The translations under genes and the position numbers were made by a program. A stretch of DNA of 64,000 nt, from positions 149,615,108 through 149,679,107 of the forward strand of contig NC_068981.1 in assembly GCF_001194135.2 (NCBI RefSeq), read 5' to 3'. Of this stretch, positions 516 through 59,298 are shown one piece after another (within the stretch, counting starts at the first letter, position 1; each line of letters opens with the position of its first letter). This stretch comes from Octopus bimaculoides (Eukaryota). Under the pieces are notes generated by a model. The model saw only the letters and a list, made by a program, of their open reading frames with translations, was not told the origin of the DNA and did no database searches.

Positions 516-520
516 TCTTT

Positions 521-631
521 CACATCACGTTGAATGCACCGGTTATCATCCGAGCACCCGAAGTTAAGAACGTCGAGCCTAGTCAGTACTTAGATGGGTG
601 ACCGCTTGGAAAACCTAGGTGCTATAAGCGT
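521..631 (+). pseudogene. 5S rRNA pseudogene lacking the first ~9 nt
   Basis: CACATCACGTTGAATGCACCGGTTATCATCCGAGCACCCGAAGTTAAGAACGTCGAGCCTAGTCAGTACTTAGATGGGTGACCGCTTGGAAAACCTAGGTGCTATAAGC aligns colinearly with invertebrate 5S rRNA (box A AGTTAAG, box C GATGGGTGACCGC). It has many substitutions and no 5' end. Confidence 0.85.
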
Positions 632-7789: not shown

Positions 7790-9140
7790 GAAGTAAGGAA
7801 GTGAAATTGGTGTCAGATGAAGGGAATAACCGGTAGAGCGGAAATGGCGCGAGACCGGGGTGTCATTGCCAAGTCTGATGTCTCGAAGGTGCTCCTCAAA
7901 CCACTTAGCCAAGCGGCGTTCCGTCTGACCGATGTACAGGGAAGGACAGAGAGAGCAGTAGATGCAGTAAATGACGTTACTAGAAGTGCAGGTAAAGGTG
8001 ATGTGATATGGACGATGATGGGTGACTGTGAAGATGGTAGTATCAGCATGGGCGGGAGCAGGGGAACGAGCGAGGCTGGGAGGTGGGGTTAGGGAAGAAA
8101 CTGTGGACCGGTAAGTCCCGCAGGTTATGGGCTTTGGCTCGTTTGAAGGAGGGAAGGGTTAGGTTGGGGAAGATGTGCAATGTGGAACAGTGAGACTGGA
8201 ATCGCCGGAAGGCTCGGAGAACGATGCGTCGGAGGGGCAGGGTAGAGGAGTGGTAGGTGAGGGGAAATGGGACACTGGAAATGGCGGGGTGGGTACGAGG
8301 TGAAACAGCATAGGCACGGTCCACGGATCGTGCCCCGGCAAGAGCAGTGTGGATAGTAGTGAGGGGATATCCACGTAGGATGAAGTGGCGAGCCATGAGT
8401 TGTGACGGGGTCTCAAAGTCATGGTTATCACTGCAGAGCCACCGCGGACGGAGGAATTGTGATTAAGGGATGGAGAGCTTGGTGTGGGTTGGGTGGGAGG
8501 AGGAGAAATCAAGGTAGGAGTGTGAGTCGATGTGTTTGCAGTGGATGGCTGTAGTGAGAACGGAGATATATATTGTGGCAAAAATGTCGAGAAATTCGAC
8601 GGAAGAGTTAGAGATAGTGTAGAAAAATTGGAGAGTAGTAGGGAAGGACTGGACAAAAGAGCGGAAGGAGTCTAGTTGTTCGCGGGAGTGGAAGGTCGTG
8701 CCCGATACAGTCATCGGTACAACGACCGTATAGTTCTGGAGTGGGACCAGTGAATTTTGAGAATATTTGGGCCTCAACGTAGTCAACGAACAGGTTCGTA
8801 TAGTTGGAGCCCATTCTCATTCCCATGACCAACTCCGAGATTATTGGTAATATTCCCTCGCGAACGAAAAGCAGTTGAGGAAGAGAAGACATTCGACCAG
8901 ACGAAGAAGTGTAGAGTGTCAGGTTGAGGGTCAGGTCAAAGGTCTAGAAAGTTTTTGAGCGCAAGAAGTCCTTCGCTGTGTATGATCATCGTATGTAAAC
9001 TTTTGATGTCAAGAGTGAACAAACATTTAGAGTGGCTAGAAGAGAAGGAGAAAGAGTTAAAGAGACGGAGAGCATGGTTAGTGTCATGTATGTGGGAGGA
9101 GAAGGAAGCCATTTGGGGAGCAAGGACGCGGTCGAGTGTA
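7790..9140 (-). mobile_element. Decayed Penelope-like element (RT plus GIY-YIG endonuclease fragments)
   Basis: Frameshifted fragments MGMRMGSNYTNLFVDYVEAQIF...PELYGRCTDDCIG (RT motifs B'/C), SSVEFLDI...DSHSYLDFSSSHPTHTKLSIP (thumb), and a YCIYC..CPSLYIGQT-type GIY-YIG near 7900-8000. Same family as 41637-43470. Confidence 0.88.
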
Positions 9141-11736: not shown

Positions 11737-12036
11737 GTATGTATGTATGTCGTATGCATGCATGTATGTGTATATTATATGTTGTATATNNNNNNNNNNN
11801 NNNNNNNNNNNNNNNNNNNNNNNNNNNNNNNNNNNNNNNNNNNNNNNNNNNNNNNNNNNNNNNNNNNNNNNNNNNNNNNNNNNNNNNNNNNNNNNNNNNN
11901 NNNNNNNNNNNNNNNNNNNNNNNNNNNNNNNNNNNNNNNNNNNNNNNNNNNNNNNNNNNNNNNNNNNNNNNNNNNNNNNNNNNNNNNNNNNNNNNNNNNN
12001 NNNNNNNNNNNNNNNNNNNNNNNNNNNNNNNNNNNN

Positions 12037-13280
12037 AAAGTGAAAGATGCAGTGAACTTGCAGTGGTTTATCCAACGTTTCGGATTCAATCCTTCGTCAG
12101 AGGGTAGGGAAAAAGAGAAGTTGAAGAACGGCAAACAGAGTTTACATCATCTCAGCTTGAACTGATAATGGACGCAAAATAATAGGGGCTACTAACGTGA
12201 AAAAAAGTTATATGAAAGGGCGTGCAGAAAGGAGGAGGAAAAAGTAATGGAGAGAGTAGAGGTAAGTAAATATGGAAATGTTGCAGAGAGAGGGTGTAAG
12301 GAGGATTAAAAAGGGTAAAAAAGAATTAGGAGGAGGTGGAAGGATGAAAGGAAAAACGTTAATTCATACGTGTCGATGACATAGTGCCAATATTAAATAT
12401 GAAACGTTGCTCCTTTCGTTTCCTAGAGAATGGAGGTCCATGGAGCAAGGTCATGTCACACACTGAAAAATCTGCAGTAGAATGATTCACAGTGTTGAAG
12501 TGGGTGGCGATAGGTTGGTCTGGCATAAGTAGCATTATGCTTCTGACGTGTTCGTGAAAGCGATCCCCAAGGCGCCACCCTGTTTCTCCAATGTAAAGAG
12601 AACCACAGAATTTGCATGTTATGCAATATATGAGATTCGCTGAAGTGCAACAGAACTGGTGTGTTATGTGAAATTGCTTTTGGGGCCCGAAAGTGTCTTT
12701 TTGTTGATGTAGGGGCATGTGTTACATCGGCGGCGAGAACATTTAAAGGTTCCTGGATGTGCAGTGCTGAGAGCTGTGAAGCTTCTAACAAGGAGATTTC
12801 TAAGACTTTATCTTTTTCAAAAGACAAGAGAGGTGGCGTGGGAAAGGTAGGGGTGGTTGTTGGGCCAGAAAGAAGAATGCGAAAGTTGTGGGTGAGTCTG
12901 TATTTTAGAGGGAGGATGGACAGGTGGTAGGTGAGAGAGAGAGTGGAATATTGAAGGTGGAAGTGCGCGAAGACGGCTGAAGAGCTTCGGTGTGGTTGAT
13001 GACTCGGGCTTGGTGGAGTGCCGGGTCGACAACTGATGTAGGCTACCATCGATTTAGAAAAAAAAACTGTTGCATCGTTTTGCAATGGGATTCGAAATCC
13101 GAATAGATGCTGCAAAGTTGTCGAAGGCGAAGAAATTGAGAGAAAGGGATGGCAGATTTAATGTGTTTGTAGTGAAAGTAGAAGTGGGAGTCAGTAGGTT
13201 TATAGTAGACAGAGGTGGAGAGGTGAGTAGTGTGTATTTTGACGGAGATATTCAGGAAGCAAACAGTAGTATCAAATATG
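12037..13280 (-). mobile_element. Penelope-like element, 3' part (RT thumb, GIY-YIG endonuclease, pyrimidine-rich 3' UTR with hammerhead motif)
   Basis: ORF 12359-12718 reads CTSANLIYCITCKFCGSLYIGETGWRLGDRFHEH...HFN...RKRKEQRFIFNIGT, a PLE GIY-YIG domain. Upstream STSVYYKPTDSH-like thumb sequence is present. Confidence 0.9.
12069..12106 (-). ncRNA. Small type I hammerhead ribozyme motif in a PLE 3' UTR (stem I imperfect)
   Basis: Minus strand: TACCCT-CTGACGA-A-GGAT(TGA)ATCC-GAAAC-GTT^GGATA. Intact core, 4-bp stem II, palindromic ACGT stem III. Confidence 0.62.
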
Positions 13281-13510
13281 GTGTATATGTATAAGTATAC
13301 ATATATATTTATTTATATATACGTATATATATATATGTAAGTTTATGAATTTGTGTTGCAATATTCCTGATGTGAAACTGTGTATTGAAACAGATATTAT
13401 TGCATTTCGGGATGGTAATTTGTTTTTCCAAATAAACACATGCACTATATATTCCCATTATTTACATTATCTACATTTGACGGATATTCGTCCTCATCTT
13501 GTTTGTTGTT

Positions 13511-13556
13511 AACACAACGTTTCGGCTGATATACCCTCCAGCCTTCGTCAGGTGTC
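13511..13556 (-). ncRNA. Small type I hammerhead ribozyme motif (sense copy within the SINE)
   Basis: GACAC-CTGACGA-A-GGCTG(GAGGGTATAT)CAGCC-GAAAC-GTT^GTGTT. Stem I GACAC/GTGTT, 5-bp stem II, palindromic ACGT stem III. Confidence 0.78.
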
Positions 13557-13600
13557 TTGGGGAAATTTCGAACCTGGGTTCTCATTCCTATCGATGTTAC

Positions 13601-13632
<32 letters not shown>

Positions 13633-13650
13633 TATTATTATTATTATTAA

Positions 13651-13726
13651 TCAGGTCGCTGCCGTGAATCGAACTCGGAACCTTGGGGTTAGTAGCCCGC
13701 ACTCTTAACCACTACGCCATATGCCC
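13651..13726 (-). promoter_or_regulatory. tRNA-derived (tRNA-Arg-like) head with Pol III A and B boxes; not a functional tRNA
   Basis: GGGCATATGGCGTAGTGGTTAAGAGTGCGGGCTACTAACCCCAAGGTTCCGAGTTCGATTCACGGCAGCGACC: A box TGGCGTAGTGG, B box GAGTTCGATTC. No complementary acceptor stem. Confidence 0.8.
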
Positions 13727-13728
13727 AA

Positions 13729-13774
13729 GACACCTGACGAAGGCTGGAGGGTATATCAGCCGAAACGTTGTGTT
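13729..13774 (+). ncRNA. Small type I hammerhead ribozyme motif (inverted copy)
   Basis: Identical to 13511-13556 but on the + strand. Predicted cleavage between 13769 and 13770. Confidence 0.78.
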
Positions 13775-14039
13775 AACAACAAACAAGATGAGGACGAATA
13801 TCCGTCAAATGTAGATAATGTAAATAATGTAAATAATTCCTCATCTCTTAAATATAGAACTGCACTATATATTCGTTCTTCACTCGGTTATTATTGTTCT
13901 AATTCCACCTCATATCCATTGTCCAGAAGTCTTTCGTCGCTCATCTGTGATCTCTTCCGCAACACTTTCCGTCTTCGTGTGTGCTCTTGCTCCGCTAATT
14001 CCATCCTGTTCTTCTATCATGTGTATCCTTATATGCGCA

Positions 14040-23877: not shown

Positions 23878-24037
23878 ACGCAGGCATGGCTGTGTGGTAA
23901 GAAGCTTGCTTCCCAACCACATGGTACCCGTTCAATCCCACTGTATGGCACCTTGACCTAGTGTCTTCTACTATAGCCTCGGGCTATACTATTGTGAGTG
24001 AATTTGGTAGACGGAAACTGAAAGAAGCGCGTCGTAT
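23878..24037 (+). mobile_element. tRNA-derived octopus-type SINE, 5' half
   Basis: CGCAGGCATGGCTGTGTGGTAAGAAGCTTGCTTCCCAACCACATGG...GACGGAAACTGAAAGAAGC, homologous to 645-1064. Confidence 0.85.
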
Positions 24038-25293: not shown

Positions 25294-25686
25294 GTGAACT
25301 ATGTACTTAAAAGTGGTCTGTGTGTTACTGACGAACTTGTGCGATCGGTGTTCAGCTAAAAATTATTGTTGGCCAATATTTGTAGAAAGAATGTGATAGT
25401 TTATAGAAGGTGGACAGAGCACACTGTCGAGAAACACTGAAACGTTGTGTTCTAATACAAACATGTCGAGTTAAGGTATGAGCGATTAATAGACAAAATA
25501 GGTGAGCAACTTAGTCAGGTGAGGGCTAAAGAGAAGCTGCATTTAAACCTTGTTTGGTAGGTACTTAGGATGATGTTAATGACAAGGTAATATATAGAAA
25601 AAGCTGAAAATTGTGAACTGTAATACCTGAACCCTTAGGAATTGTAAACTTCTAGACACACACATGTGCGCGCGCATACAAATACT

Positions 25687-30334: not shown

Positions 30335-31056
30335 ACAACCAATCAATATTTGCATTATGCATCTCAAACGCAATGAAATCGAACTTGTTTTGAAATGAAT
30401 CATCACTGGTGATGAAAACTGAATTGTCTACAATAACATCAATCGAAAACGATCATGGTCGAAGCGTAATTAACCAGCACAAACCACACCGAAAGCTGAA
30501 TTGCATAAAAAAGTTCATGCTTTCAATTTGGTGGGATTACAAAAGTATTGTGTATTTTGAACTGCTTCGAAGGTACCAAACGATCAATTCAGATGTTTAC
30601 TGTCAACAACTAATTAAACAGGAGGAAGCAATCAAAGAAAAACCACCAGAATTGGCGAATCGTAAAGGAATCGTGTTCCACCATGACAACGCTAGACCAT
30701 ACACATTTTTGCCAACTCGTGAAAAATTATTGGAGCTTGGTGGGAAGTGATGTCACATCTACCATATAACCCTGGCCTTGTATCATCAGATAACCATTTT
30801 TTCGAAGTTCACAAAATTATTTGAATAGTAAAACTTTCAATAATGATGATATCCTGAATAGCACTTGCCTCAGGTTTTGGGTGATAACGACCAGAAGTTG
30901 TATGAGCGTGAAATCATTAAGTTTCCAGAAAGATGGCAAAGGTCGTCGAACAAAATGGAAAATATATAATTGATTAAAGTTCATTCTTTGCATGAAAATA
31001 AAATGACTTTTATTTCAAACTAAAAAGACAGAAATTACTTTCTTGCTATCTCGATA
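30335..31056 (+). mobile_element. Mariner remnant (3' half with TIR)
   Basis: KKFMLSIWWDYKSIVYFELL...DVYCQQL...GIVFHHDNARPYT. Degenerate 3' TIR GAAATTACTTTCTTGCTATCTCGATA. Confidence 0.9.
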
Positions 31057-37762: not shown

Positions 37763-39371
37763 CTGTATGAACTTATTTGGTATTGCATCGAATGTTGAGC
37801 GATTGCTTAGAAAAACTATGACGAATTGGAGGACGGACCTGACAGCATGCGGAAGAAGTTTAGGGATAGTAGAAATTAGAGGCATCTTCCATGGGGACTG
37901 CTTCTCCCCACTGATCTTTGTACTGTACTTGATACCACTAACACTAATTCCGAGGAAAGTAAAAGCTGGGTATGTATTTGGAAGCCGCGAGCAAAAAGTC
38001 AACCATTTGTTATTCATGGATGACCTCAAACTTTATGGTAAAGATGAAGCCCAAGTCAGTTCCCTCGTTGATACGATGTATAGCTTCAGTGCTGATATCA
38101 GAATGGAGTTCGGACTGAGAAAGTGTGGTGTGTTTGTCTTGGAGAGAAGCAAAATCAAATGTATTGACGGGCTAACGATACCATCGGGGGAGGTTATGAA
38201 GCAGATAGAAGAGACGGGCTATAAGTACTTGGAGATTTTGGAAATGGACAAATTGATGGAGAAAAAAAATGACAAAAAAATTTAAGGTGGAATACTTGCG
38301 CAAACTGAGACAGATACTTAAGTCGAAATTAAATGGACGGAATAAAATCGAAGCTACGAACAACTGGATGGTTTCACTCTTTAGATATGGAGCAGGGGTA
38401 ATCGCATGGACAGTAGACGAACTAAACAGCTAAGACAGAAAGACAAGGCAGTCGCTAACTAGATATGGATCACTCCACCCAAAACGTGACACAGACAGAC
38501 TGTATGTACCAAGAAAAAGAGGTGGAAGAAGCCTTATTGGATGCGAATACAGCATTAGAGCAGAAGAAAACAACATAGCCTCGTATGTAAAAAATGCCAC
38601 AGAACCGCTATTATTAGAAGAAGGCCTGGCTTGTGTAGGAGGAAAGATTGCAAAGGTGGGTAAAGAAAAGAATGCATGGCCAATTTCATAGGGATGTTGA
38701 AGATAAGACAGACAGAGAAAAAAGATGGCTGTGGATGACTAAAAGTGATTTAAAACCGGAAACGGAAGCTCTAATCTGTGCCGCCCAAGAGCAAGCACTA
38801 AGAACAAACTACATAAAATATAGAATAGGCAACACATCAGAAAGTGATAAGTGCAGAATTTGTGGAAAAAACGGTGAAACCGTATGACATATTACCATCC
38901 AATGTACGTCACTAGCCCAGTAGGAATATGAGAGACGCCACGACAATATAGCTAGGCTTGTCCATTGGACACTTTGAAACACGTGTGGTCTTGACAGAGC
39001 AAAAAATTAGTATGACCACAAACCTGAAGTCATCGTCGAAAATAGAAATGCAAGGATCCTATGTGATTTTATGAGTCAGTGCGACTACGAGATAGAGAAT
39101 AAGAAAAGTCGAGAGATATGACAGGTTAGCTTGGGAAGTTAAGCAGTTGTGGTCGATGAAAAAAGTAGCAGTAGTACCAATAATTGTCGGAGCCCTGGGA
39201 ACAGTGAGCAAAAATCTCGAGAAGTACGTAGAACAAATAGGGATTGCAATACAGGTGGAGCACTTACAAAAAACAGTACTGCTTGGAACCGCTCGAATAC
39301 TCCGGAAGGTGCTCGAAAAATAAGATGGTGTTACCTTAGTTCACTGGTAATACATGTACAGCAAAGGAACT
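37763..39371 (+). mobile_element. 5'-truncated R4/Dong-clade non-LTR retrotransposon (RT, CCHC finger, restriction-like endonuclease region), family B, decayed
   Basis: RGIFHGDCFSPLIFVL...NHLLFMDDLKLY...GLRKC...YKYLEI; KRMHGQF...ETEALICAAQEQALRTNY...CRICGKNGETV*HITIQC; LQKTVLLGTARILRKVL. Bounded by (TAA)n on both sides. Confidence 0.9.
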
Positions 39372-54706: not shown

Positions 54707-55149
54707 NNNNNNNNNNNNNNNNNNNNNNNNNNNNNNNNNNNNNNNNNNNNNNNNNNNNNNNNNNNNNNNNNNNNNNNNNNNNNNNNNNNNNNNNNNNNNN
54801 NNNNNNNNNNNNNNNNNNNNNNNNNNNNNNNNNNNNNNNNNNNNNNNNNNNNNNNNNNNNNNNNNNNNNNNNNNNNNNNNNNNNNNNNNNATATAATATA
54901 TGATTAATAAATTCAAAAAGGGATAAAACTCATTTACAAGAATTTTATCAAGAAGCCAGTGTGTAAAAAAATTCATAAGGGAAATTTCTATTCCCAAGAA
55001 TATAATTATTCGTTTATATTTATATAATGGGCATTACTACAGAAAAATAATAATGCCACACACTGGACTTCTCAAAATAACCACATTTAGTACCGAATGC
55101 GAGGAAAAACAACCAACAGAAGACGACCAACTTTCTTTTAAATAACTCA

Positions 55150-55211
55150 ACTATGTATCGACTGATTTCGCGATTACTAGAATGAATCTAGATTTCGCTC
55201 ATCAGCATAGT
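55150..55211 (-). ncRNA. Canonical type I hammerhead ribozyme motif
   Basis: ACTATG-CTGATGA-GCGA(AAT CTAGA TTCAT TCTAG TAA)TCGC-GAAA-TC(AGTC)GA-TA^CATAGT. All three stems pair. Confidence 0.82.
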
Positions 55212-55640
55212 ATTGTTCCAAAAATATATATAAATAAAAAGAATTCTCACCTCACCAAACACGAACACACTACGTATCCGACAGAGTAAAGGAAATGATG
55301 TTTATCAGTATACATCTTCATCAAAGAAGCGGGAATACTTCCGGGTTGCTTTTGGGTACACGTGTGGCGACAGGAATAAAAATTCAGCATTGAATATATT
55401 CCGTGTATATATTTGATTAATAAATTCAAAAAGGGATAAAACTGTTTTACAAGAATTTTATCAAGAAGCCGGTGTGTAAAAAATATCATAAGGGACATTT
55501 CTATTCCCCGGAAGTATTCCCGCTTCTTTGATGAAGATGTATACAGATAAACTTCATTCCCTTTACTCTGTCGGATACGTAGTGTGTTCGTTTTTGGTGA
55601 GGTGAGAATTCTGTTTATTTATATATATTTTTGGAACAAT

Positions 55641-55702
55641 ACTATGCTGATGAGCGAAATCTAGATTCATTCTAGTAATCGCGAAATCGGTCGATACATG
55701 GT
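55641..55702 (+). ncRNA. Canonical type I hammerhead ribozyme motif (inverted copy)
   Basis: ACTATG-CTGATGA-GCGA...TCGC-GAAA-TC(GGTC)GA-TA^CATGGT. The two differences from the other copy lie in loop III and as a G.U pair in stem I. Predicted cleavage at 55696/55697. Confidence 0.82.
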
Positions 55703-55901
55703 TGAGTTATTTAAAAGAAAGTTGGTCGTCTTCTGTTGGTTGTTTTTCCTCGCATTCGGTACTAAATGTGGTTATTTTGAGAAGTTCAGTGTGTGACATT
55801 ATTATTTTTCTGTAGTAATGCCCATTATATAAATATAAACGAATATATATATAATATATATATAATAAATATATATAAATACACATTATGTACAGGACAT
55901 T

Positions 55902-56298
55902 ATCAACGAGTGAAAAATACGTAAACACACGAGAGAAAAGTACAAGATAAAATACCAAAAGAAGATAATTCGCTCATCAGTTGTCGGCTGTTTATTACTA
56001 ACCAATTCGTGCTTTTAACGACAAGATAAGAATATTTCATAACACAGTACCATCCAAACATTCTTAAAGTATCAAATTCGTGGTACGCCAACTTTATTGT
56101 TCGAAGCCCTAACTCTCCAAAAATTTAATACTTTTAAAGTTACTGGATGCTGCTGTCTAATGAAGTATTCCTATCTTGTCGCTAAAAGCACGAAATGGGT
56201 AGTAATAAACCGTCGACAACTGATGAGCGAATTATCTTCTTTTGGAATTTTGTCCTGTACTTTTCTCTCGTGTGTCTACGCATTTTTCACTCGTTGAT
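55902..56298. repeat. ~177-bp inverted repeat (55902-56078, 56122-56298) with a 43-nt spacer
   Basis: ATCAACGAGTGAAAAAT.CGTA.ACACACGAGAGAAAAGTACA mirrored by TGTACTTTTCTCTCGTGTGTCTACGCATTTTTCACTCGTTGAT; about 80-85% identity. Confidence 0.88.
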
Positions 56299-57176: not shown

Positions 57177-58296
57177 TGTCTTGGCATCGCTTCGTTGACG
57201 AAGATTAGAAAGGCTGTTGTCCACGTCGTCAGCACGCTCGTTTGTGGCTGAAAAGGCCGATATGGGATCGACATATCCGATTGCAGTGATGACAGAAGTA
57301 CGGTTGTTCAGGGTCTAATGATGCAGCTGAATTATGTTTTCGCCTCTGATATTTGTCTTCAAGAACGGCTCTGCGTTTTATCTCAAAGGAGGAAACAACA
57401 TCGCTCATGGTATGGCACCAAGCAACGCAATCAGCTACTATAGTGGACAACTCACGATAATCAATGTCATAAACGCTAAGGAACTGCTTCAGGCAGTCCT
57501 TGTAACGCTTCCTTGGCGCTCTCCTCTTGCGGTGGTCTGTGGTGAGCTCACCGTACATGATCTTGGGTAGGCGGTGGTCTTTGATCATGTTAACGTGCCA
57601 TGCCCAATGCAGTTGTGTCTCAAGTAAAATGGCTTCCAGGCTAGTGACATTTGTTCGCTCGAGGAGGACCTTAGTGTTGGTAATGTAATCGTTCCAGTAA
57701 ATGTTGAGGATAGTACGGAGGCACAGTTGGTGAAAACTTCAAGGAGCCGCAGATGATAATAGTAGGGGATCCAGAACTCAGAGCCGTATAGAAGCGTCAT
57801 GAGAACGACGGCCTTGTAGACGCTGACTTTTGTGCTGATCTTAAGATGCTTGTTGCTCCACACACGCTTGTACATTCTGCCAAATGCTTTGTTTGCCTTT
57901 GCGAGTCCGTTGTCAATTTCTTTGTTGATACTTGCATCTGATGAGATAGTACATCCAAGATAACCGAACTGCTGTACCGACCTCAGTTCTGTTTCGGCTA
58001 TGGAGATGTGGGGCGGGCTGTAATGGTGTAGGAATTTAGTCTTTTTCAAGCTTACTTCTAGCCCGAAGAGTTGGGTAGCCTCTGCAAAGCAGGATGTGAC
58101 GCACTGCAGGGCTCTTTCGGTGTGTGCAACAAGTACGGCATCATCTGTAAAGAATCAGTTGCTCTTGGATCTTGATGTGAGCCTGTAGGTTGATGTGAGG
58201 CTGGAGGTTGAAAAGACTGCCGTTCAGACGGTACGTGATGTAATCGCCGTCTTCAGCGCCGAGGTCTGCAGTCGCCTGCTTCAGCATCATGCTGAA
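57177..58296 (-). mobile_element. RTE/BovB-clade LINE, 3' portion (RT C-terminal half, C-terminal zinc finger, 3' UTR), decayed
   Basis: FFSMMLKQ..YITYRLNGSLFNL, FGYLGCTISSDASINKEIDNGLAKANKAFGRM...TKVSVYKAVVLMTLLYGSE, RLPKIMYGEL...YKDCLK...CHHCNRICRSHIGLFSHKRAC. Confidence 0.92.
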
Positions 58297-58467
58297 GAAA
58301 GACAATGTGGTTTCAGAGCCAATAGAGGCACAACAGATATGGTTTTTGTTCTCAAGCAGGTCCAAGAGAATTGCCGGGTGCAAAGGAAACCACTTTATGT
58401 AGCATTAGTCATTCTGATGAAAGCTTTCGACACTGTGAGCAGGAAAAGTCTGTGGCAGATCCTAACC
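58297..58467 (+). mobile_element. Inverted 5' segment of the same RTE element (upstream RT motifs)
   Basis: RQCGFRANRGTTDMVFVLKQVQENCRVQRKPLYVALVILMKAFDTVSRKSLWQIL on the opposite strand, abutting the minus-strand body. Confidence 0.85.
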
Positions 58468-59298
58468 AATATATTATATATGTATGTGTGTGTGTGTGTG
58501 TGTGTATGTGTGTGTGTGTGTATGCATGTATGTATGTATGTATGTATTTGCACGCATATATACCTATATGTATGTATATATGTATAGGCCAACTTTTATC
58601 ACACAGTTCTCACCTGAATTTATGGAATATATGAAAACTGGTAATTGACGATATAACTGTTTATTCTCTTAATTTAGCAATACAATGTCATATTATGGAT
58701 TAGTTGGTGTTGGTTTTTGAAAAAAAATTATTTAATCTAATATATTCCGAATACATATTTAGCTACAGAGTGTAGGGACTACATTACATGAAATATATTT
58801 TCCCTGTGGTTCCTTTTAAGGAAGTGCTTTATTACCTGCGAGAATTCGATTTTGAGGTTATAGAGATATTAATTACGTTACTTCCTATAAACTTATAATT
58901 TTGCTATAATAGAAGATGACAGCAACCACTTAGGATCATTTAACACAATTAGTGTTTATTTCTATGTTTAAGGGAATATACATATTCTATGAAGAAAATT
59001 GATAATTTTTGTTCTTAAACTGGGTGTATGTCAACGCATAGTTATACTTACATTTGAATGTTAAACGCTGACCATTTTGATATATAGGTGTTCTATTCTT
59101 ATGTTATATATGTTGTATTCAGACTCAGTATAAATCTACGGTGCTTTAAAATTGCTCTAAAACAGATATAGAATTCTTAATATGAAATAAACTCAAACAT
59201 TTTGAGAAACTAGCATTTGCTACTCTAAAATATATAAGAAAGGTCAAAAACCTACTAAAGAGATTATATTTATATATATTCTTTGTAAGTATATACAT

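What the first reader, a model, noticed from the sequence alone, without database searches (positions are those of the whole stretch)
13455..13726. tRNA-promoter SINE carrying a hammerhead ribozyme tail: candidate Penelope-mobilised SINE
Seen on the minus strand: a tRNA-Arg-like head with A and B boxes, then (AAT)n, a ~40-nt linker, an intact small type I hammerhead (GACAC-CUGACGA-A-GGCUG..CAGCC-GAAAC-GUU^GUGUU) and an A/T-rich tail. No TTTT occurs on that strand, so Pol III could read through the ribozyme. Established: SINE tails usually derive from the partner LINE 3' end, and small hammerheads with palindromic stem III are associated with PLEs and reported to cleave as dimers. Inference: a Pol III SINE whose tail is a PLE pLTR, processed by self-cleavage and mobilised by Penelope RT/endonuclease rather than a LINE. 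I do not know of this described for cephalopods, but cannot check the literature here.
Basis: partly seen in the sequence, partly recalled or inferred. Interest (0 to 1): 0.9.

Follow-up and report, generated by a model that had tools for sequence, protein, structure and literature searches.

The report
Octopus SINE with hammerhead ribozyme tail
This is a young copy of a short octopus mobile element that joins a tRNA-like RNA polymerase III promoter to a tail carrying a Penelope-type minimal hammerhead ribozyme, and its insertion pattern suggests that Penelope-like retrotransposons, not LINEs, copy it.

Summary
On the minus strand, 13726-13455 reads: tRNA-like head with A and B boxes, (AAT)n, a 43-nt linker, an intact minimal type I hammerhead (cleavage predicted at 13516|13515), and a 55-nt tail. 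There is no TTTT.

An inverted, 5'-truncated second copy of the ribozyme and tail (13724-13860, + strand) abuts the head's 5' end. It carries a 31-nt terminal extension. The whole 406-bp composite lies between perfect 14-bp target-site duplications.

Translated searches recovered about 24 diverged relatives (Logan octopus-like contigs, two O. bimaculoides proteins). Head and tail are joined at four independent loci. The upstream inverted fragment recurs at five loci, always with the same outer end but a different inner end. That is the published insertion signature of Penelope-like elements. A Penelope remnant 1.35 kb away has its own similar hammerhead.

Three things are not shown: a coding Penelope element with a matching tail, Pol III transcription, and self-cleavage. 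All copies span the cleavage site. The tRNA-Arg assignment is unverified.

The nearest precedents are the schistosome Sm-alpha SINE-like elements and animal retrozymes. I rate it a new variant of a known kind.

The parts
13441..13454 (.). Target-site duplication, left copy (TGCACTATATATTC)
   Evidence: An exact 14-nt direct repeat of 13861-13874 that sits precisely at the two outer ends of the composite.
13455..13726 (-). Full-length SINE copy: head, (AAT)n, linker, hammerhead, tail. It lacks the 31-nt terminal extension.
   Evidence: It aligns along its length with diverged copies L004, L005 and L013.
13652..13726 (-). tRNA-like head with the Pol III A box (13719-13709) and B box (13675-13665). 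The 5' end is GGGCATATGG, 7 nt before the A box.
   Evidence: Box scan. Relaxed ARAGORN finds a weak tRNA-like fold. The same 5' end, GG(G/A)CATATG, follows different upstream sequence in L004 and L013.
13600..13651 (-). Internal (AAT)n microsatellite
   Evidence: A-rich or AAT-like runs occupy the same place in L004, L005, L008, L013 and L015.
13557..13599 (-). Linker, containing a second B-box-like motif AGGTTCGAAAT (13575-13565)
   Evidence: It is conserved in all relatives.
13511..13556 (-). Minimal type I hammerhead. Helix I is GACAC/GUGUU, followed by CUGACGA and an extra A. Helix II is GGCUGG/UCAGCC, followed by GAA and an ACGU palindrome with no helix III loop. Predicted cleavage is after U at 13516.
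   Evidence: Descriptor scan gave 2 hits against 0 in 200 shuffles. The covariance model scored 67.3 bits.
13456..13510 (-). 3' tail with AATGTAAAT-type 9-mers
   Evidence: It is conserved in relatives.
13724..13860 (+). Inverted, 5'-truncated second copy: CCCAA, hammerhead 13729-13774, tail 13775-13829, and the 31-nt extension 13830-13860. It abuts the head's 5' end.
   Evidence: It is identical to the full copy from CCCAAGACACC through AATGTAAATAATG, about 106 nt. The extension also occurs in other copies (P0001, L006).
13861..13874 (.). Target-site duplication, right copy
12037..12800 (-). Neighbouring Penelope-like element remnant; it is not part of the SINE. It has a Cys-rich linker and a frameshifted GIY-YIG endonuclease ORF (12718-12359). 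Its 3' UTR holds its own minimal-hammerhead core CTGACGAAGGATTGAATCCGAAACGTTGG (12100-12072). It is cut off by the N gap at 12036.
   Evidence: Homologues score down to E 6e-38, and several carry Pfam PF01541. The covariance model scored 36.2 bits.

Best explanation
The locus is one recent insertion of a non-autonomous retroposon family, a SINE.

**Proposed life cycle**
- The RNA starts at a tRNA-derived head with an internal Pol III promoter.
- It ends in a roughly 190-nt module (linker, minimal hammerhead, tail, extension) of the type found at the 3' ends of Penelope-like elements.
- Pol III starts at GGGCAUAUGG and reads through (AAU)n and the ribozyme, because the element contains no T4 terminator.
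- The reverse transcriptase / GIY-YIG endonuclease of a Penelope-like element recognises the 3' module and copies the RNA by target-primed reverse transcription.
- As with Penelope elements themselves, both ends of the staggered break are primed. This yields a full-length copy plus an inverted, 5'-truncated second copy joined head-to-head. The pair is flanked by a 7-14 bp target-site duplication.

**Shown**
- The anatomy.
- The family: about 24 diverged tail clusters.
- Head-tail linkage at four loci.
- The recurrent inverted architecture with variable inner ends.
- The target-site duplications.
- The Penelope-type hammerhead features.
- Youth of this copy: arms identical, all CpGs intact.

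**Inferred**
- Pol III transcription.
- The identity of the mobilising enzyme.
- Any catalytic role for the hammerhead. It would have to act as a dimer through its ACGU palindrome. It may instead, or also, serve as a recognition or dimerisation module.
For: **Anatomy and chance control**
-.

**Single-event insertion**
- The inverted repeat and the 14-bp duplication enclose the head and both arms.

**Family**
- phmmer with the element's own reading frame found 56 spurious-ORF proteins covering linker, hammerhead and tail.
- About 24 are close relatives from Logan contigs.
- Two more are named O. bimaculoides entries.

**Head-tail linkage**
- L004 is a full-length diverged copy.
- L005 has a 5'-truncated head.
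- L013 starts with GGGCATATGGCG but has an internal deletion in the head.

**Recurrent inverted fragment upstream**
- In each locus the outer end is the element's 3' end and the inner end differs. L008 shows only an inverted linker fragment cut by the contig end.

| Locus | Length of inverted fragment |
|---|---|
| window | 137 nt |
| L004 | 45 nt |
| L005 | about 115 nt |
| L006 | about 108 nt |
| L013 | 73 nt |

- Sources.
- Target-site duplications are 14 nt (window), 9 nt (L013) and 7 nt (L004).
[quoted passage not shown] PMC4209133 also reports dual minimal hammerheads 100-700 bp apart on opposite strands.

**Hammerhead**
- The consensus of seven copies is an intact hammerhead, while old copies are decayed mainly at CpGs.
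- Penelope 3' UTR hammerheads in the window and in L002 keep helix II through compensatory changes: GGAUU/AAUCC against GGCUG/CAGCC.

**Availability of the enzyme**
- Two Penelope remnants lie in the window.
- O. vulgaris is reported to have 31 recently active Penelope-like families (PMC13282606).
Against: - No autonomous Penelope element with a 3' end matching the linker, tail and extension was found. The neighbouring remnant's 3' UTR is no more similar than shuffled sequence outside the ribozyme boxes (score 22; shuffles mean 17, maximum 28).
- I could not search an octopus genome, so copy number and partner remain open.
- Rfam and default ARAGORN recognise neither the ribozyme nor a tRNA.
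- All genomic copies span the predicted cleavage site, and none of the inverted fragments starts at it. Self-cleavage is therefore not visible in the record. Published Penelope minimal hammerheads cleave poorly in vitro (PMC4209133).
- Covariation support is modest: score 0.265 against 0.192 in shuffles, reached by 6 of 500. It rests on decayed copies and on a structure derived from one of the sequences.
- The species of the Logan runs is not named.
Confidence: 0.65

Rival explanations
1. It is an ordinary LINE-dependent tRNA-SINE. The tail happens to contain a hammerhead-like string, and the inverted arm arose by twin priming during LINE-type reverse transcription.
For: LINE RT fragments are present in the window. 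Target-site duplications of 7-14 bp also fit LINE integration. No Penelope partner was found.
Against: Twin priming inverts a segment; it does not duplicate the 3' end. Here both arms are the same 3' module, and this recurs at five loci. There is no poly(A) or simple-repeat 3' terminus. The tail matches no LINE sequence in the window. The hammerhead descriptor gave no hit in 200 shuffles, and the motif carries features specific to Penelope hammerheads.
Confidence: 0.12
2. It is a nested or chimeric structure. A simple tRNA-SINE ending in (AAT)n landed in, or was template-switched onto, a pre-existing palindromic pair of truncated Penelope 3' ends. On this reading, head and tail are not one element.
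For: The (AAT)n run could be the tail of a simple SINE. Penelope elements favour microsatellite targets (PMC8557442). Hammerhead-tail pairs without a head do exist (L006).
Against: The same head-(AAT)n-linker-hammerhead order occurs at four loci with different flanks and different degrees of decay. A single perfect duplication encloses everything. No duplication flanks the head plus (AAT)n alone. The head's 5' end is the same nucleotide in the window, L004 and L013.
Confidence: 0.1
3. It is a DNA-level foldback element or MITE with roughly 115-bp terminal inverted repeats, or an assembly artefact that created a palindrome.
For: The arms are long and nearly perfect, with a short spacer. The scaffold has many N gaps.
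Against: The ends are not symmetrical, since the 31-nt extension is on one side only. The inner ends of the inverted fragments vary from locus to locus while the outer ends are constant, which is a truncation pattern and not a fixed inverted repeat. Duplication length varies from 7 to 14 bp. The interior has Pol III boxes. The same architecture appears in independent Logan assemblies.
Confidence: 0.05

Closest known systems
Sm-alpha / Sj-alpha SINE-like retroposons of Schistosoma (Ferbeyre et al. 1998; Laha et al. 2000; as summarised in PMC6765202 and PMC2770079)
   Same: Both are short non-coding retroposons that combine a tRNA-derived Pol III promoter region with a type I hammerhead in one unit. 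Both are high-copy and dispersed.
   Different: Sm-alpha carries a canonical hammerhead with a real helix III that cleaves in cis or trans. It typically sits in tandem arrays, with the promoter downstream of the cleavage site. The octopus hammerhead is the Penelope-type minimal form with no helix III loop. It lies in the 3' module, and copies occur as full-length plus inverted-truncated pairs. Sequence homology to Sm-alpha was not tested.
[quoted passage not shown] 2017)
   Same: Core boxes, the extra nucleotide after A9, the G10.1-C11.1 pair, a 5-bp helix I, a 6-bp helix II, the palindromic ACGU in place of helix III (implying dimers), and occurrence as pairs on opposite strands a few hundred bp apart.
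   Different: The carrier here has no RT/EN ORF. It has a tRNA-like Pol III head instead. Dispersed 'orphan' minimal hammerheads were previously taken to be truncated Penelope elements.
Metazoan non-LTR retrozymes, proposed as non-autonomous partners of Penelope-like elements (PMC7229834; bioRxiv 10.64898/2026.07.22.740005)
   Same: Non-coding, hammerhead-bearing, presumed to borrow the Penelope machinery. The other-species relatives found here (L012, P0036, P0046) do form 125-nt head-to-tail units each with a hammerhead.
   Different: Retrozymes are tandem arrays with canonical type I hammerheads, are expressed as circRNAs, and have no Pol III head described. The octopus copies are single units with an inverted partner.
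Classical tRNA-SINE / LINE partnerships, including the octopus tRNA-derived SINEs of Ohshima & Okada 1994 (cited in PMC10886601)
   Same: tRNA-derived head with A and B boxes, a body, a 3' module presumably recognised by the partner's RT, and target-site duplications.
   Different: The 3' module is Penelope-like, not LINE-like, and the integration products have the Penelope architecture. I could not compare the sequence with OR1, OR2 or OK.

Membership tests
tRNA-derived SINE (SINE2) | Internal Pol III promoter: A box TRGCNNAGTGG and B box GGTTCGANNCC at tRNA-like spacing | tested here: met
   A box 11/11 at 13719-13709, B box 9/11 at 13675-13665, 33 nt between them. The L005 copy has AGTTCAATTCC, 10/11.
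tRNA-derived SINE (SINE2) | Recognisable tRNA-like cloverleaf or an identifiable parent tRNA | tested here: inconclusive
   ARAGORN at default settings finds nothing. Rfam finds no tRNA at E<=10. Relaxed ARAGORN gives a 65-nt fold with T and anticodon arms only and anticodon ACT. The resemblance to tRNA-Arg(UCU) is from my memory only.
tRNA-derived SINE (SINE2) | Short, non-coding, dispersed multi-copy family with a common 5' end and target-site duplications | tested here: met
   About 24 diverged tail clusters. Four loci have the head, and the common 5' end is GG(G/A)CATATG. Duplications are 14, 9 and 7 nt. True copy number is unknown.
tRNA-derived SINE (SINE2) | 3' region shared with an autonomous partner retrotransposon | tested here: inconclusive
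   No LINE or Penelope sequence in the window matches the tail beyond the ribozyme boxes. No octopus genome was searchable.
Penelope-type minimal hammerhead | Type I topology with CUGANGA and GAAA boxes and H17 | tested here: met
   CUGACGA ... GAA-ACGU-U^G.
Penelope-type minimal hammerhead | Unpaired nucleotide between A9 and G10.1, and a G10.1-C11.1 pair | tested here: met
   CUGACGA-A-GGCUGG...UCAGCC-GAA. Criteria taken from PMC4209133.
Penelope-type minimal hammerhead | No helix III loop; palindromic 15.2-16.2, so helix III can form only between two copies | tested here: met
   A15.1-C-G-U16.1 forms the ACGU palindrome with zero loop. The monomer MFE fold does not give a hammerhead.
Penelope-type minimal hammerhead | Resides in the pseudo-LTR or 3' region of an element encoding RT and GIY-YIG EN | tested here: not met
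   The 272-nt element has no such ORF. A separate Penelope remnant 1.35 kb away has its own hammerhead core 260 nt after the EN stop.
Penelope-type minimal hammerhead | Self-cleavage as a dimer | not testable with these tools
   This needs in vitro transcription of monomer and dimer constructs with core mutants.
Penelope-type integration product | Inverted 5'-truncated copy immediately adjacent to the 5' end of the full copy | tested here: met
   Window 13724-13860. Also L004 1446-1490, L005 571-686, L006 715-822 and L013 773-845. Criterion from PMC8557442.
Penelope-type integration product | A 30-40 bp terminal extension present at one end only | tested here: met
   The 31-nt extension 13830-13860 is on the inverted arm only. 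The same holds in L004 and L013. Some other copies carry it on both arms (L006).
Penelope-type integration product | Partial head-to-tail tandem (pseudo-LTR) | tested here: not met
   There is no direct tandem at this locus or in the octopus-like contigs. Tandem 125-nt units occur only in the other-species relatives (L012).
Sm-alpha / Sj-alpha | Canonical hammerhead with a helix III hairpin, active on its own transcripts, with tandem organisation | tested here: not met
   There is no helix III loop and no tandem arrangement. The description of Sm-alpha comes from PMC6765202.
Metazoan non-LTR retrozyme | Tandem 170-400 nt repeats each with a type I hammerhead, expressed as circRNA | tested here: not met
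   This is a single unit with an inverted partner. circRNA is not testable here.

The most novel reading that the evidence does not exclude
tRNA-headed SINEs that parasitise Penelope-like elements may be a widespread, unrecognised class that accounts for many of the thousands of 'orphan' minimal hammerheads in animal genomes. In this class the hammerhead would work mainly as an RNA-RNA dimerisation and RT-recruitment module. Pairing of two template RNAs through the ACGU palindrome would cause the two-copy (inverted or tandem) insertions typical of Penelope elements and of these SINEs. Supporting hints: another species (ENA contigs such as L012) carries an almost identical hammerhead (CCUGAAGAAGGCUGGAGGACAUAUCGGCCGAAACGUUGUGG) in tandem and inverted arrangements, with a B-box-like stretch just upstream.
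Probability: 0.2. Interest if true: 0.85.

Novelty: new variant of a known kind. Interest (0 to 1): 0.66.

Why it matters
All well-characterised SINEs depend on LINEs. The non-autonomous partners proposed for Penelope-like elements (retrozymes) have no Pol III head. What the hammerheads in Penelope elements do has been open since they were described in 2014.

This family offers a roughly 300-nt, Pol III-type element with one minimal hammerhead, young copies, and a clear Penelope-like integration signature. That makes a compact system for three questions:
- Does Penelope RT/EN recognise the hammerhead module?
- Is cleavage or dimerisation needed for mobility?
- How do the inverted two-copy insertions arise?

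It would also change how dispersed minimal hammerheads, and the many 'unclassified SINEs' of octopus genomes, are annotated. Each such insertion creates a perfect hairpin of about 110 bp if it is transcribed through, which is relevant in animals with heavy A-to-I editing.

Tried and rejected
- **Rfam.** Gathering and E<=10 thresholds gave no hammerhead or tRNA hit on the locus, on the related loci, or on a consensus type I hammerhead elsewhere in the window. Rfam is therefore uninformative for these motifs.
- **ARAGORN at default settings.** No tRNA in the window or the loci.
- **BLAST of head, linker and tail against the window.** No second copy.
- **DNA scans.** A 19-mer from helix II gave one chance hit on a bacterial contig in JGI metagenomes (L001) and nothing in GTDB genomes.
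- **Word-index protein searches.** The element's frame gave one hit, P0001. A concatenated six-frame query gave none.
- **Exact look-ups.** P0001 and the window ORF are not on record. The P0054 gene is too long for its DNA to be returned.
- **Homologues of the Penelope endonuclease**. All came from other species. L002 and L003 share no SINE sequence with the window.
- **Neighbouring Penelope remnant as partner.** Rejected: there is no similarity beyond the ribozyme boxes.
- **RNAcofold of two hammerheads.** It gave an extended duplex and not the double hammerhead. Thermodynamic folding does not model the core.
- **Covariance model built from 12 hammerheads.** It found only the input sequences plus two weak fragments.
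- **Literature.** Searches found no description of hammerhead-bearing SINEs in cephalopods. Lunse 2017 and Ferbeyre 1998 were not held in the library.
Full report
**1. Is it there?**

Read on the minus strand, 13726-13455 contains the following:
- a 75-nt head starting GGGCATATGG;
- an (AAT)n run, 13651-13600;
- a 43-nt linker, 13599-13557;
- the string GACAC-CUGACGA-A-GGCUGG-AGGGUAUA-UCAGCC-GAA-ACGU-U^GUGUU, 13556-13511;
- a 55-nt A/T-rich tail with AATGTAAAT-type repeats, 13510-13456.

The head has a perfect A box (TGGCGTAGTGG, 13719-13709). A 9/11 B box (AGTTCGATTCA, 13675-13665) follows 33 nt later. No TTTT occurs in the element, and the first one downstream is at 13066.

I wrote a minimal-hammerhead descriptor with these requirements: CUGANGA; zero or one extra nucleotide; helix II of at least 4 bp; GAAA; a complementary 15.2/16.2 pair; U16.1; H17; helix I of at least 4 bp. 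It hit exactly twice in the window, here and at 13729-13774 on the plus strand. It hit zero times in 200 dinucleotide-preserving shuffles.

Rfam and default ARAGORN see neither a hammerhead nor a tRNA. Rfam also misses a textbook type I hammerhead at 55639-55700, so its silence carries little weight. Relaxed ARAGORN gives only a weak tRNA-like fold (T arm, 3-bp anticodon stem, loop CUACUAA, no D arm). 'tRNA-Arg-like' therefore cannot be confirmed. I recall a resemblance to tRNA-Arg(UCU), but I did not test it.

**2.

The ribozyme and tail form one arm of an inverted repeat, 13450-13566 against 13719-13835.
- Aligned, the two copies are identical from CCCAAGACACC through AATGTAAATAATG, about 106 nt.
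- The plus-strand copy is 5'-truncated six nucleotides before helix I, and it abuts the first base of the head.
- At its outer end it continues for 31 nt (TAAATAATTCCTCATCTCTTAAATATAGAAC, 13830-13860). The full copy lacks this extension.
- Directly outside both ends lies the same 14-mer, TGCACTATATATTC (13441-13454 and 13861-13874).

So 13455-13860 is a single 406-bp insertion: target-site duplication, full-length copy (minus strand), inverted 5'-truncated copy joined head-to-head, target-site duplication. Identical arms, a perfect duplication and intact CpGs indicate a recent event.

**3. Is it a family, and do head and tail belong together?**

The window holds no second copy, and no octopus genome could be searched as DNA. 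I therefore used the element's own open frame (13711-13448, minus strand) as a protein query.
- The word-indexed search gave one hit, an Octopus bimaculoides 'uncharacterized protein' (A0A0L8FV75). It translates linker, hammerhead, tail and extension of another copy.
- The exhaustive phmmer search gave 56 hits.
- About 24 are close relatives. They come from 1-3 kb Logan contigs (runs SRR11869384-94) and from O. bimaculoides.
- One of these is RefSeq XP_052825882.1, whose N-terminus is translated from a tail copy.
- The remaining 32 hits come from long ENA contigs of at least one other species.

Fetching the DNA gave the following.

| Locus | What it contains |
|---|---|
| L004 | Full-length, about 75% identical copy: head GGACATATGAAGTAATGGTTAAGAG..., degenerate AAT run, linker, decayed hammerhead, tail |
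| L005 | 5'-truncated head (..CCGAGTTCAATTCC..), then (AAT)n, linker, hammerhead, tail |
| L013 / L014 | Starts with the exact head terminus GGGCATATGGCG, has an internal head deletion, then A-rich repeats, linker, hammerhead, tail |
| L006, L008, L015 | Headless 5'-truncated copies |

Head and tail are therefore linked at four independent loci with different flanks and ages. The 5' end is the same nucleotide in three of them, 7 nt before the A box. That is where a tRNA-type Pol III transcript would start. One contig (L005) ends in the same abundant tRNA-SINE seen in the window at about 23880-24030, so the Logan runs are from the same or a close octopus species.

**4. The insertion architecture recurs.**

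An inverted fragment of the element's 3' end sits just upstream of the direct copy in five loci.

| Locus | Position of inverted fragment | Length |
|---|---|---|
| window | 13724-13860 | 137 nt |
| L004 | 1446-1490 | 45 nt |
| L005 | 571-686 | about 115 nt, reaching into the linker |
| L006 | 715-822 | about 108 nt |
| L013 | 773-845 | 73 nt |

L008 also begins with an inverted linker fragment.
- The outer end is always the element's 3' terminus (...AAATATAGAAC).
- The inner end differs every time.
- A few filler bases may separate the fragment from the head.
- That is a truncation pattern generated anew at each insertion. It is not a fixed terminal inverted repeat.
- Target-site duplications are 14 nt (window), 9 nt (L013, TAAATAGTA) and 7 nt (L004, AGAAACA).

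Craig et al. [quoted passage not shown] Cervera & de la Pena 2014 noted dual minimal hammerheads 100-700 bp apart on opposite strands (PMC4209133). LINE twin priming inverts a segment but does not duplicate the 3' end. MITEs have symmetrical termini and fixed duplications.

**5. The ribozyme is of the Penelope type.**

PMC4209133 lists features that emerged independently of their descriptor:
- a G10.1-C11.1 pair;
- palindromic 15.2-16.2 positions.

It also reports a short helix I (4-5 bp) and a longer helix II. The octopus motif has all of these. With ACGU and no loop, helix III can form only between two copies.

The majority consensus of seven copies is an intact hammerhead. Old copies are broken mostly at the CpGs of CUGACGA and CCGAAACG. 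Hence the source genes kept the motif intact while dead copies decayed.

A Penelope remnant lies 1.35 kb away on the same strand.
- It has a Cys-rich linker plus a frameshifted GIY-YIG ORF, 12718-12359.
- Its homologues score down to E 6e-38, and several carry PF01541.
- It carries CTGACGAAGGATTGAATCCGAAACGTTGG 260 nt after its stop codon (12100-12072).
- It shares CTGACGAAGG and CCGAAACGTTG with the SINE.
- Its helix II is kept by two compensatory changes (GGAUU/AAUCC against GGCUG/CAGCC).

A Penelope element of another species (L002) has a homologous box 130-190 nt after its endonuclease gene.

Pair counts were made on 12 hammerheads.
- 75% of cells are paired, against at most 53% with slid partners.
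- Six pairs show changes on both sides.
- The covariation score is 0.265 against 0.192 in shuffles, reached by 6 of 500.

This is supportive but weak, because the copies are decayed and the structure was derived from one of the sequences. A covariance model built from the 12 found nothing new of note.

**6. What is not shown.**
- No autonomous Penelope element with a matching 3' end was found. The neighbour's 3' UTR resembles the SINE tail no more than shuffled sequence does outside the boxes, and it runs into an N gap.
- Pol III transcription is inferred from the boxes, the fixed 5' end and the absence of T4.
- Self-cleavage is untested, and nothing in the copies points to it. Every copy spans GUU^G, and no truncation point falls there.
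- Penelope minimal hammerheads cleave poorly in vitro (PMC4209133).
- The 3' end of the RNA cannot be made by this ribozyme, since the tail lies downstream of the cleavage site.

I therefore treat the hammerhead as a conserved, probably required 3' module whose role (cleavage, dimerisation or RT recognition) is open.

**7. Comparison with what is known.**
- The closest precedent for a tRNA-type Pol III head plus a hammerhead in one SINE is Sm-alpha / Sj-alpha of schistosomes (PMC6765202, PMC2770079). They have canonical hammerheads, tandem organisation, and the promoter downstream of the cleavage site.
- Animal non-LTR retrozymes are proposed as non-autonomous partners of Penelope elements (PMC7229834; 2026 preprint). 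They are tandem arrays without a Pol III head.
- The other-species relatives found here (L012, P0036, P0046) look like that kind: 125-nt head-to-tail units with an almost identical hammerhead.
- Dispersed minimal hammerheads were previously read as truncated Penelope elements (PMC4209133, PMC7761336).
- I found no paper describing hammerhead-tailed SINEs in cephalopods or a SINE mobilised by Penelope elements. The library is incomplete, and Repbase and Dfam could not be consulted.
- Octopus genomes are rich in unclassified SINEs and have recently active Penelope families (PMC13282606).

**8. Verdict.**

| Claim | Confidence |
|---|---|
| This is a hammerhead-tailed tRNA-SINE family | high |
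| Penelope enzymes mobilise it | moderate, about 0.6-0.65 |
| It self-cleaves as part of its cycle | low |

I rate it a new variant of a known kind, with interest about 0.66.

Noticed in passing
window 54896-55852: A second, unrelated hammerhead element also sits as an inverted pair. Its 346-nt arms (55000-55345 / 55507-55852) are 97% complementary and 161 nt apart. Each arm carries a consensus type I hammerhead pointing outward (plus strand about 55639-55700, minus strand about 55213-55150): ACUAUG-CUGAUGA-GCGA..UCGC-GAA-AUC-(G/A)GUC-GAU-A^CAU(G/A)GU. A 105-nt direct repeat occurs at 54896-55000 and 55409-55513. Rfam does not detect these hammerheads.
   Followed up: partly
window 55902-56298: Another inverted repeat (182-nt arms, 86% complementary, 33 nt apart). 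It contains only a CTGATGAGCGAA half-core, so it may be a decayed relative of the element above.
   Followed up: no
window 12037-12800 and 7800-8700 (minus strand): Two Penelope-like element remnants lie in the same orientation as the SINE. The first has a frameshifted Cys-rich linker and GIY-YIG ORF plus a 3' UTR hammerhead core at 12100-12072, and it is cut by an N gap. The second has an RT C-terminus, a linker and a GIY-YIG region (..NVIYCIYCSLCPSLYIGQTERRL..) but no hammerhead downstream.
   Followed up: partly
window 517-629 (+): A 5S rRNA match (56 bits against a gathering score of 38) with a damaged terminal helix. It could be a 5S gene, a pseudogene or the head of a 5S-derived SINE.
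   Followed up: no
window about 23880-24030 (+): A copy of a different, apparently abundant tRNA-derived SINE (GGCTGTGTGGTAAGAAGCTTGCTTCCCAACCACATGG...GTGTCTTCTACTATAGCCTCGGGC). It ends in a (TA)n run next to an N gap. The same SINE is seen at the end of Logan contig L005.
   Followed up: partly
P0054 = XP_052825882.1 (O. bimaculoides, GCA_001194135.2): This 94-aa RefSeq model, 'dystrobrevin beta isoform X1', has an N-terminus (..GEGWRVYQPKCCVNNKQDEDKYPS..) that is a translation of the SINE's hammerhead and tail. It is either an exonised copy or an annotation artefact.
   Followed up: no
L012 9880-10300 (ENA ERZ21867824) and proteins P0036, P0041-43, P0046, P0074 and others: Another species carries a nearly identical hammerhead (CCTGAAGAAGGCTGGAGGACATATCGGCCGAAACGTTGTGG). 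It occurs in 125-nt head-to-tail units and in inverted arrangements, preceded by a conserved roughly 100-nt region with B-box-like motifs. The stretch just 5' of that hammerhead resembles the B-box part of the octopus head. The species is not identified.
   Followed up: partly
window 13565-13575 (minus strand): The linker contains a second B-box-like motif, AGGTTCGAAAT. This suggests that the 3' module itself may descend from a tRNA-related sequence.
   Followed up: no
window 13230-13256 (-) and 25436-25465 (+): Two short stretches resemble parts of the SINE tail. GAATATCTCCGTCAAAATA resembles the tail. GAAACGTTGTGTTCTAATACAAACA resembles the 3' half of the hammerhead plus tail (covariance model 17.9 bits, E 0.08). 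They may be old fragments or chance matches.
   Followed up: no
L002 10787-10824: The 3' UTR hammerhead box of a Penelope element from another species has C in place of the conserved U4 (CCGACGAAGGGCTAACGCTCGAAACGTC). It is either a core variant or a dead copy.
   Followed up: no
window 30409-30750, 37767-38285, 57229-58587: A mariner-type transposase fragment (PF01359) and several LINE reverse-transcriptase fragments (PF00078). The window is largely repeats, with 12 N gaps mostly next to (TA)n or (ATAC)n runs.
   Followed up: no
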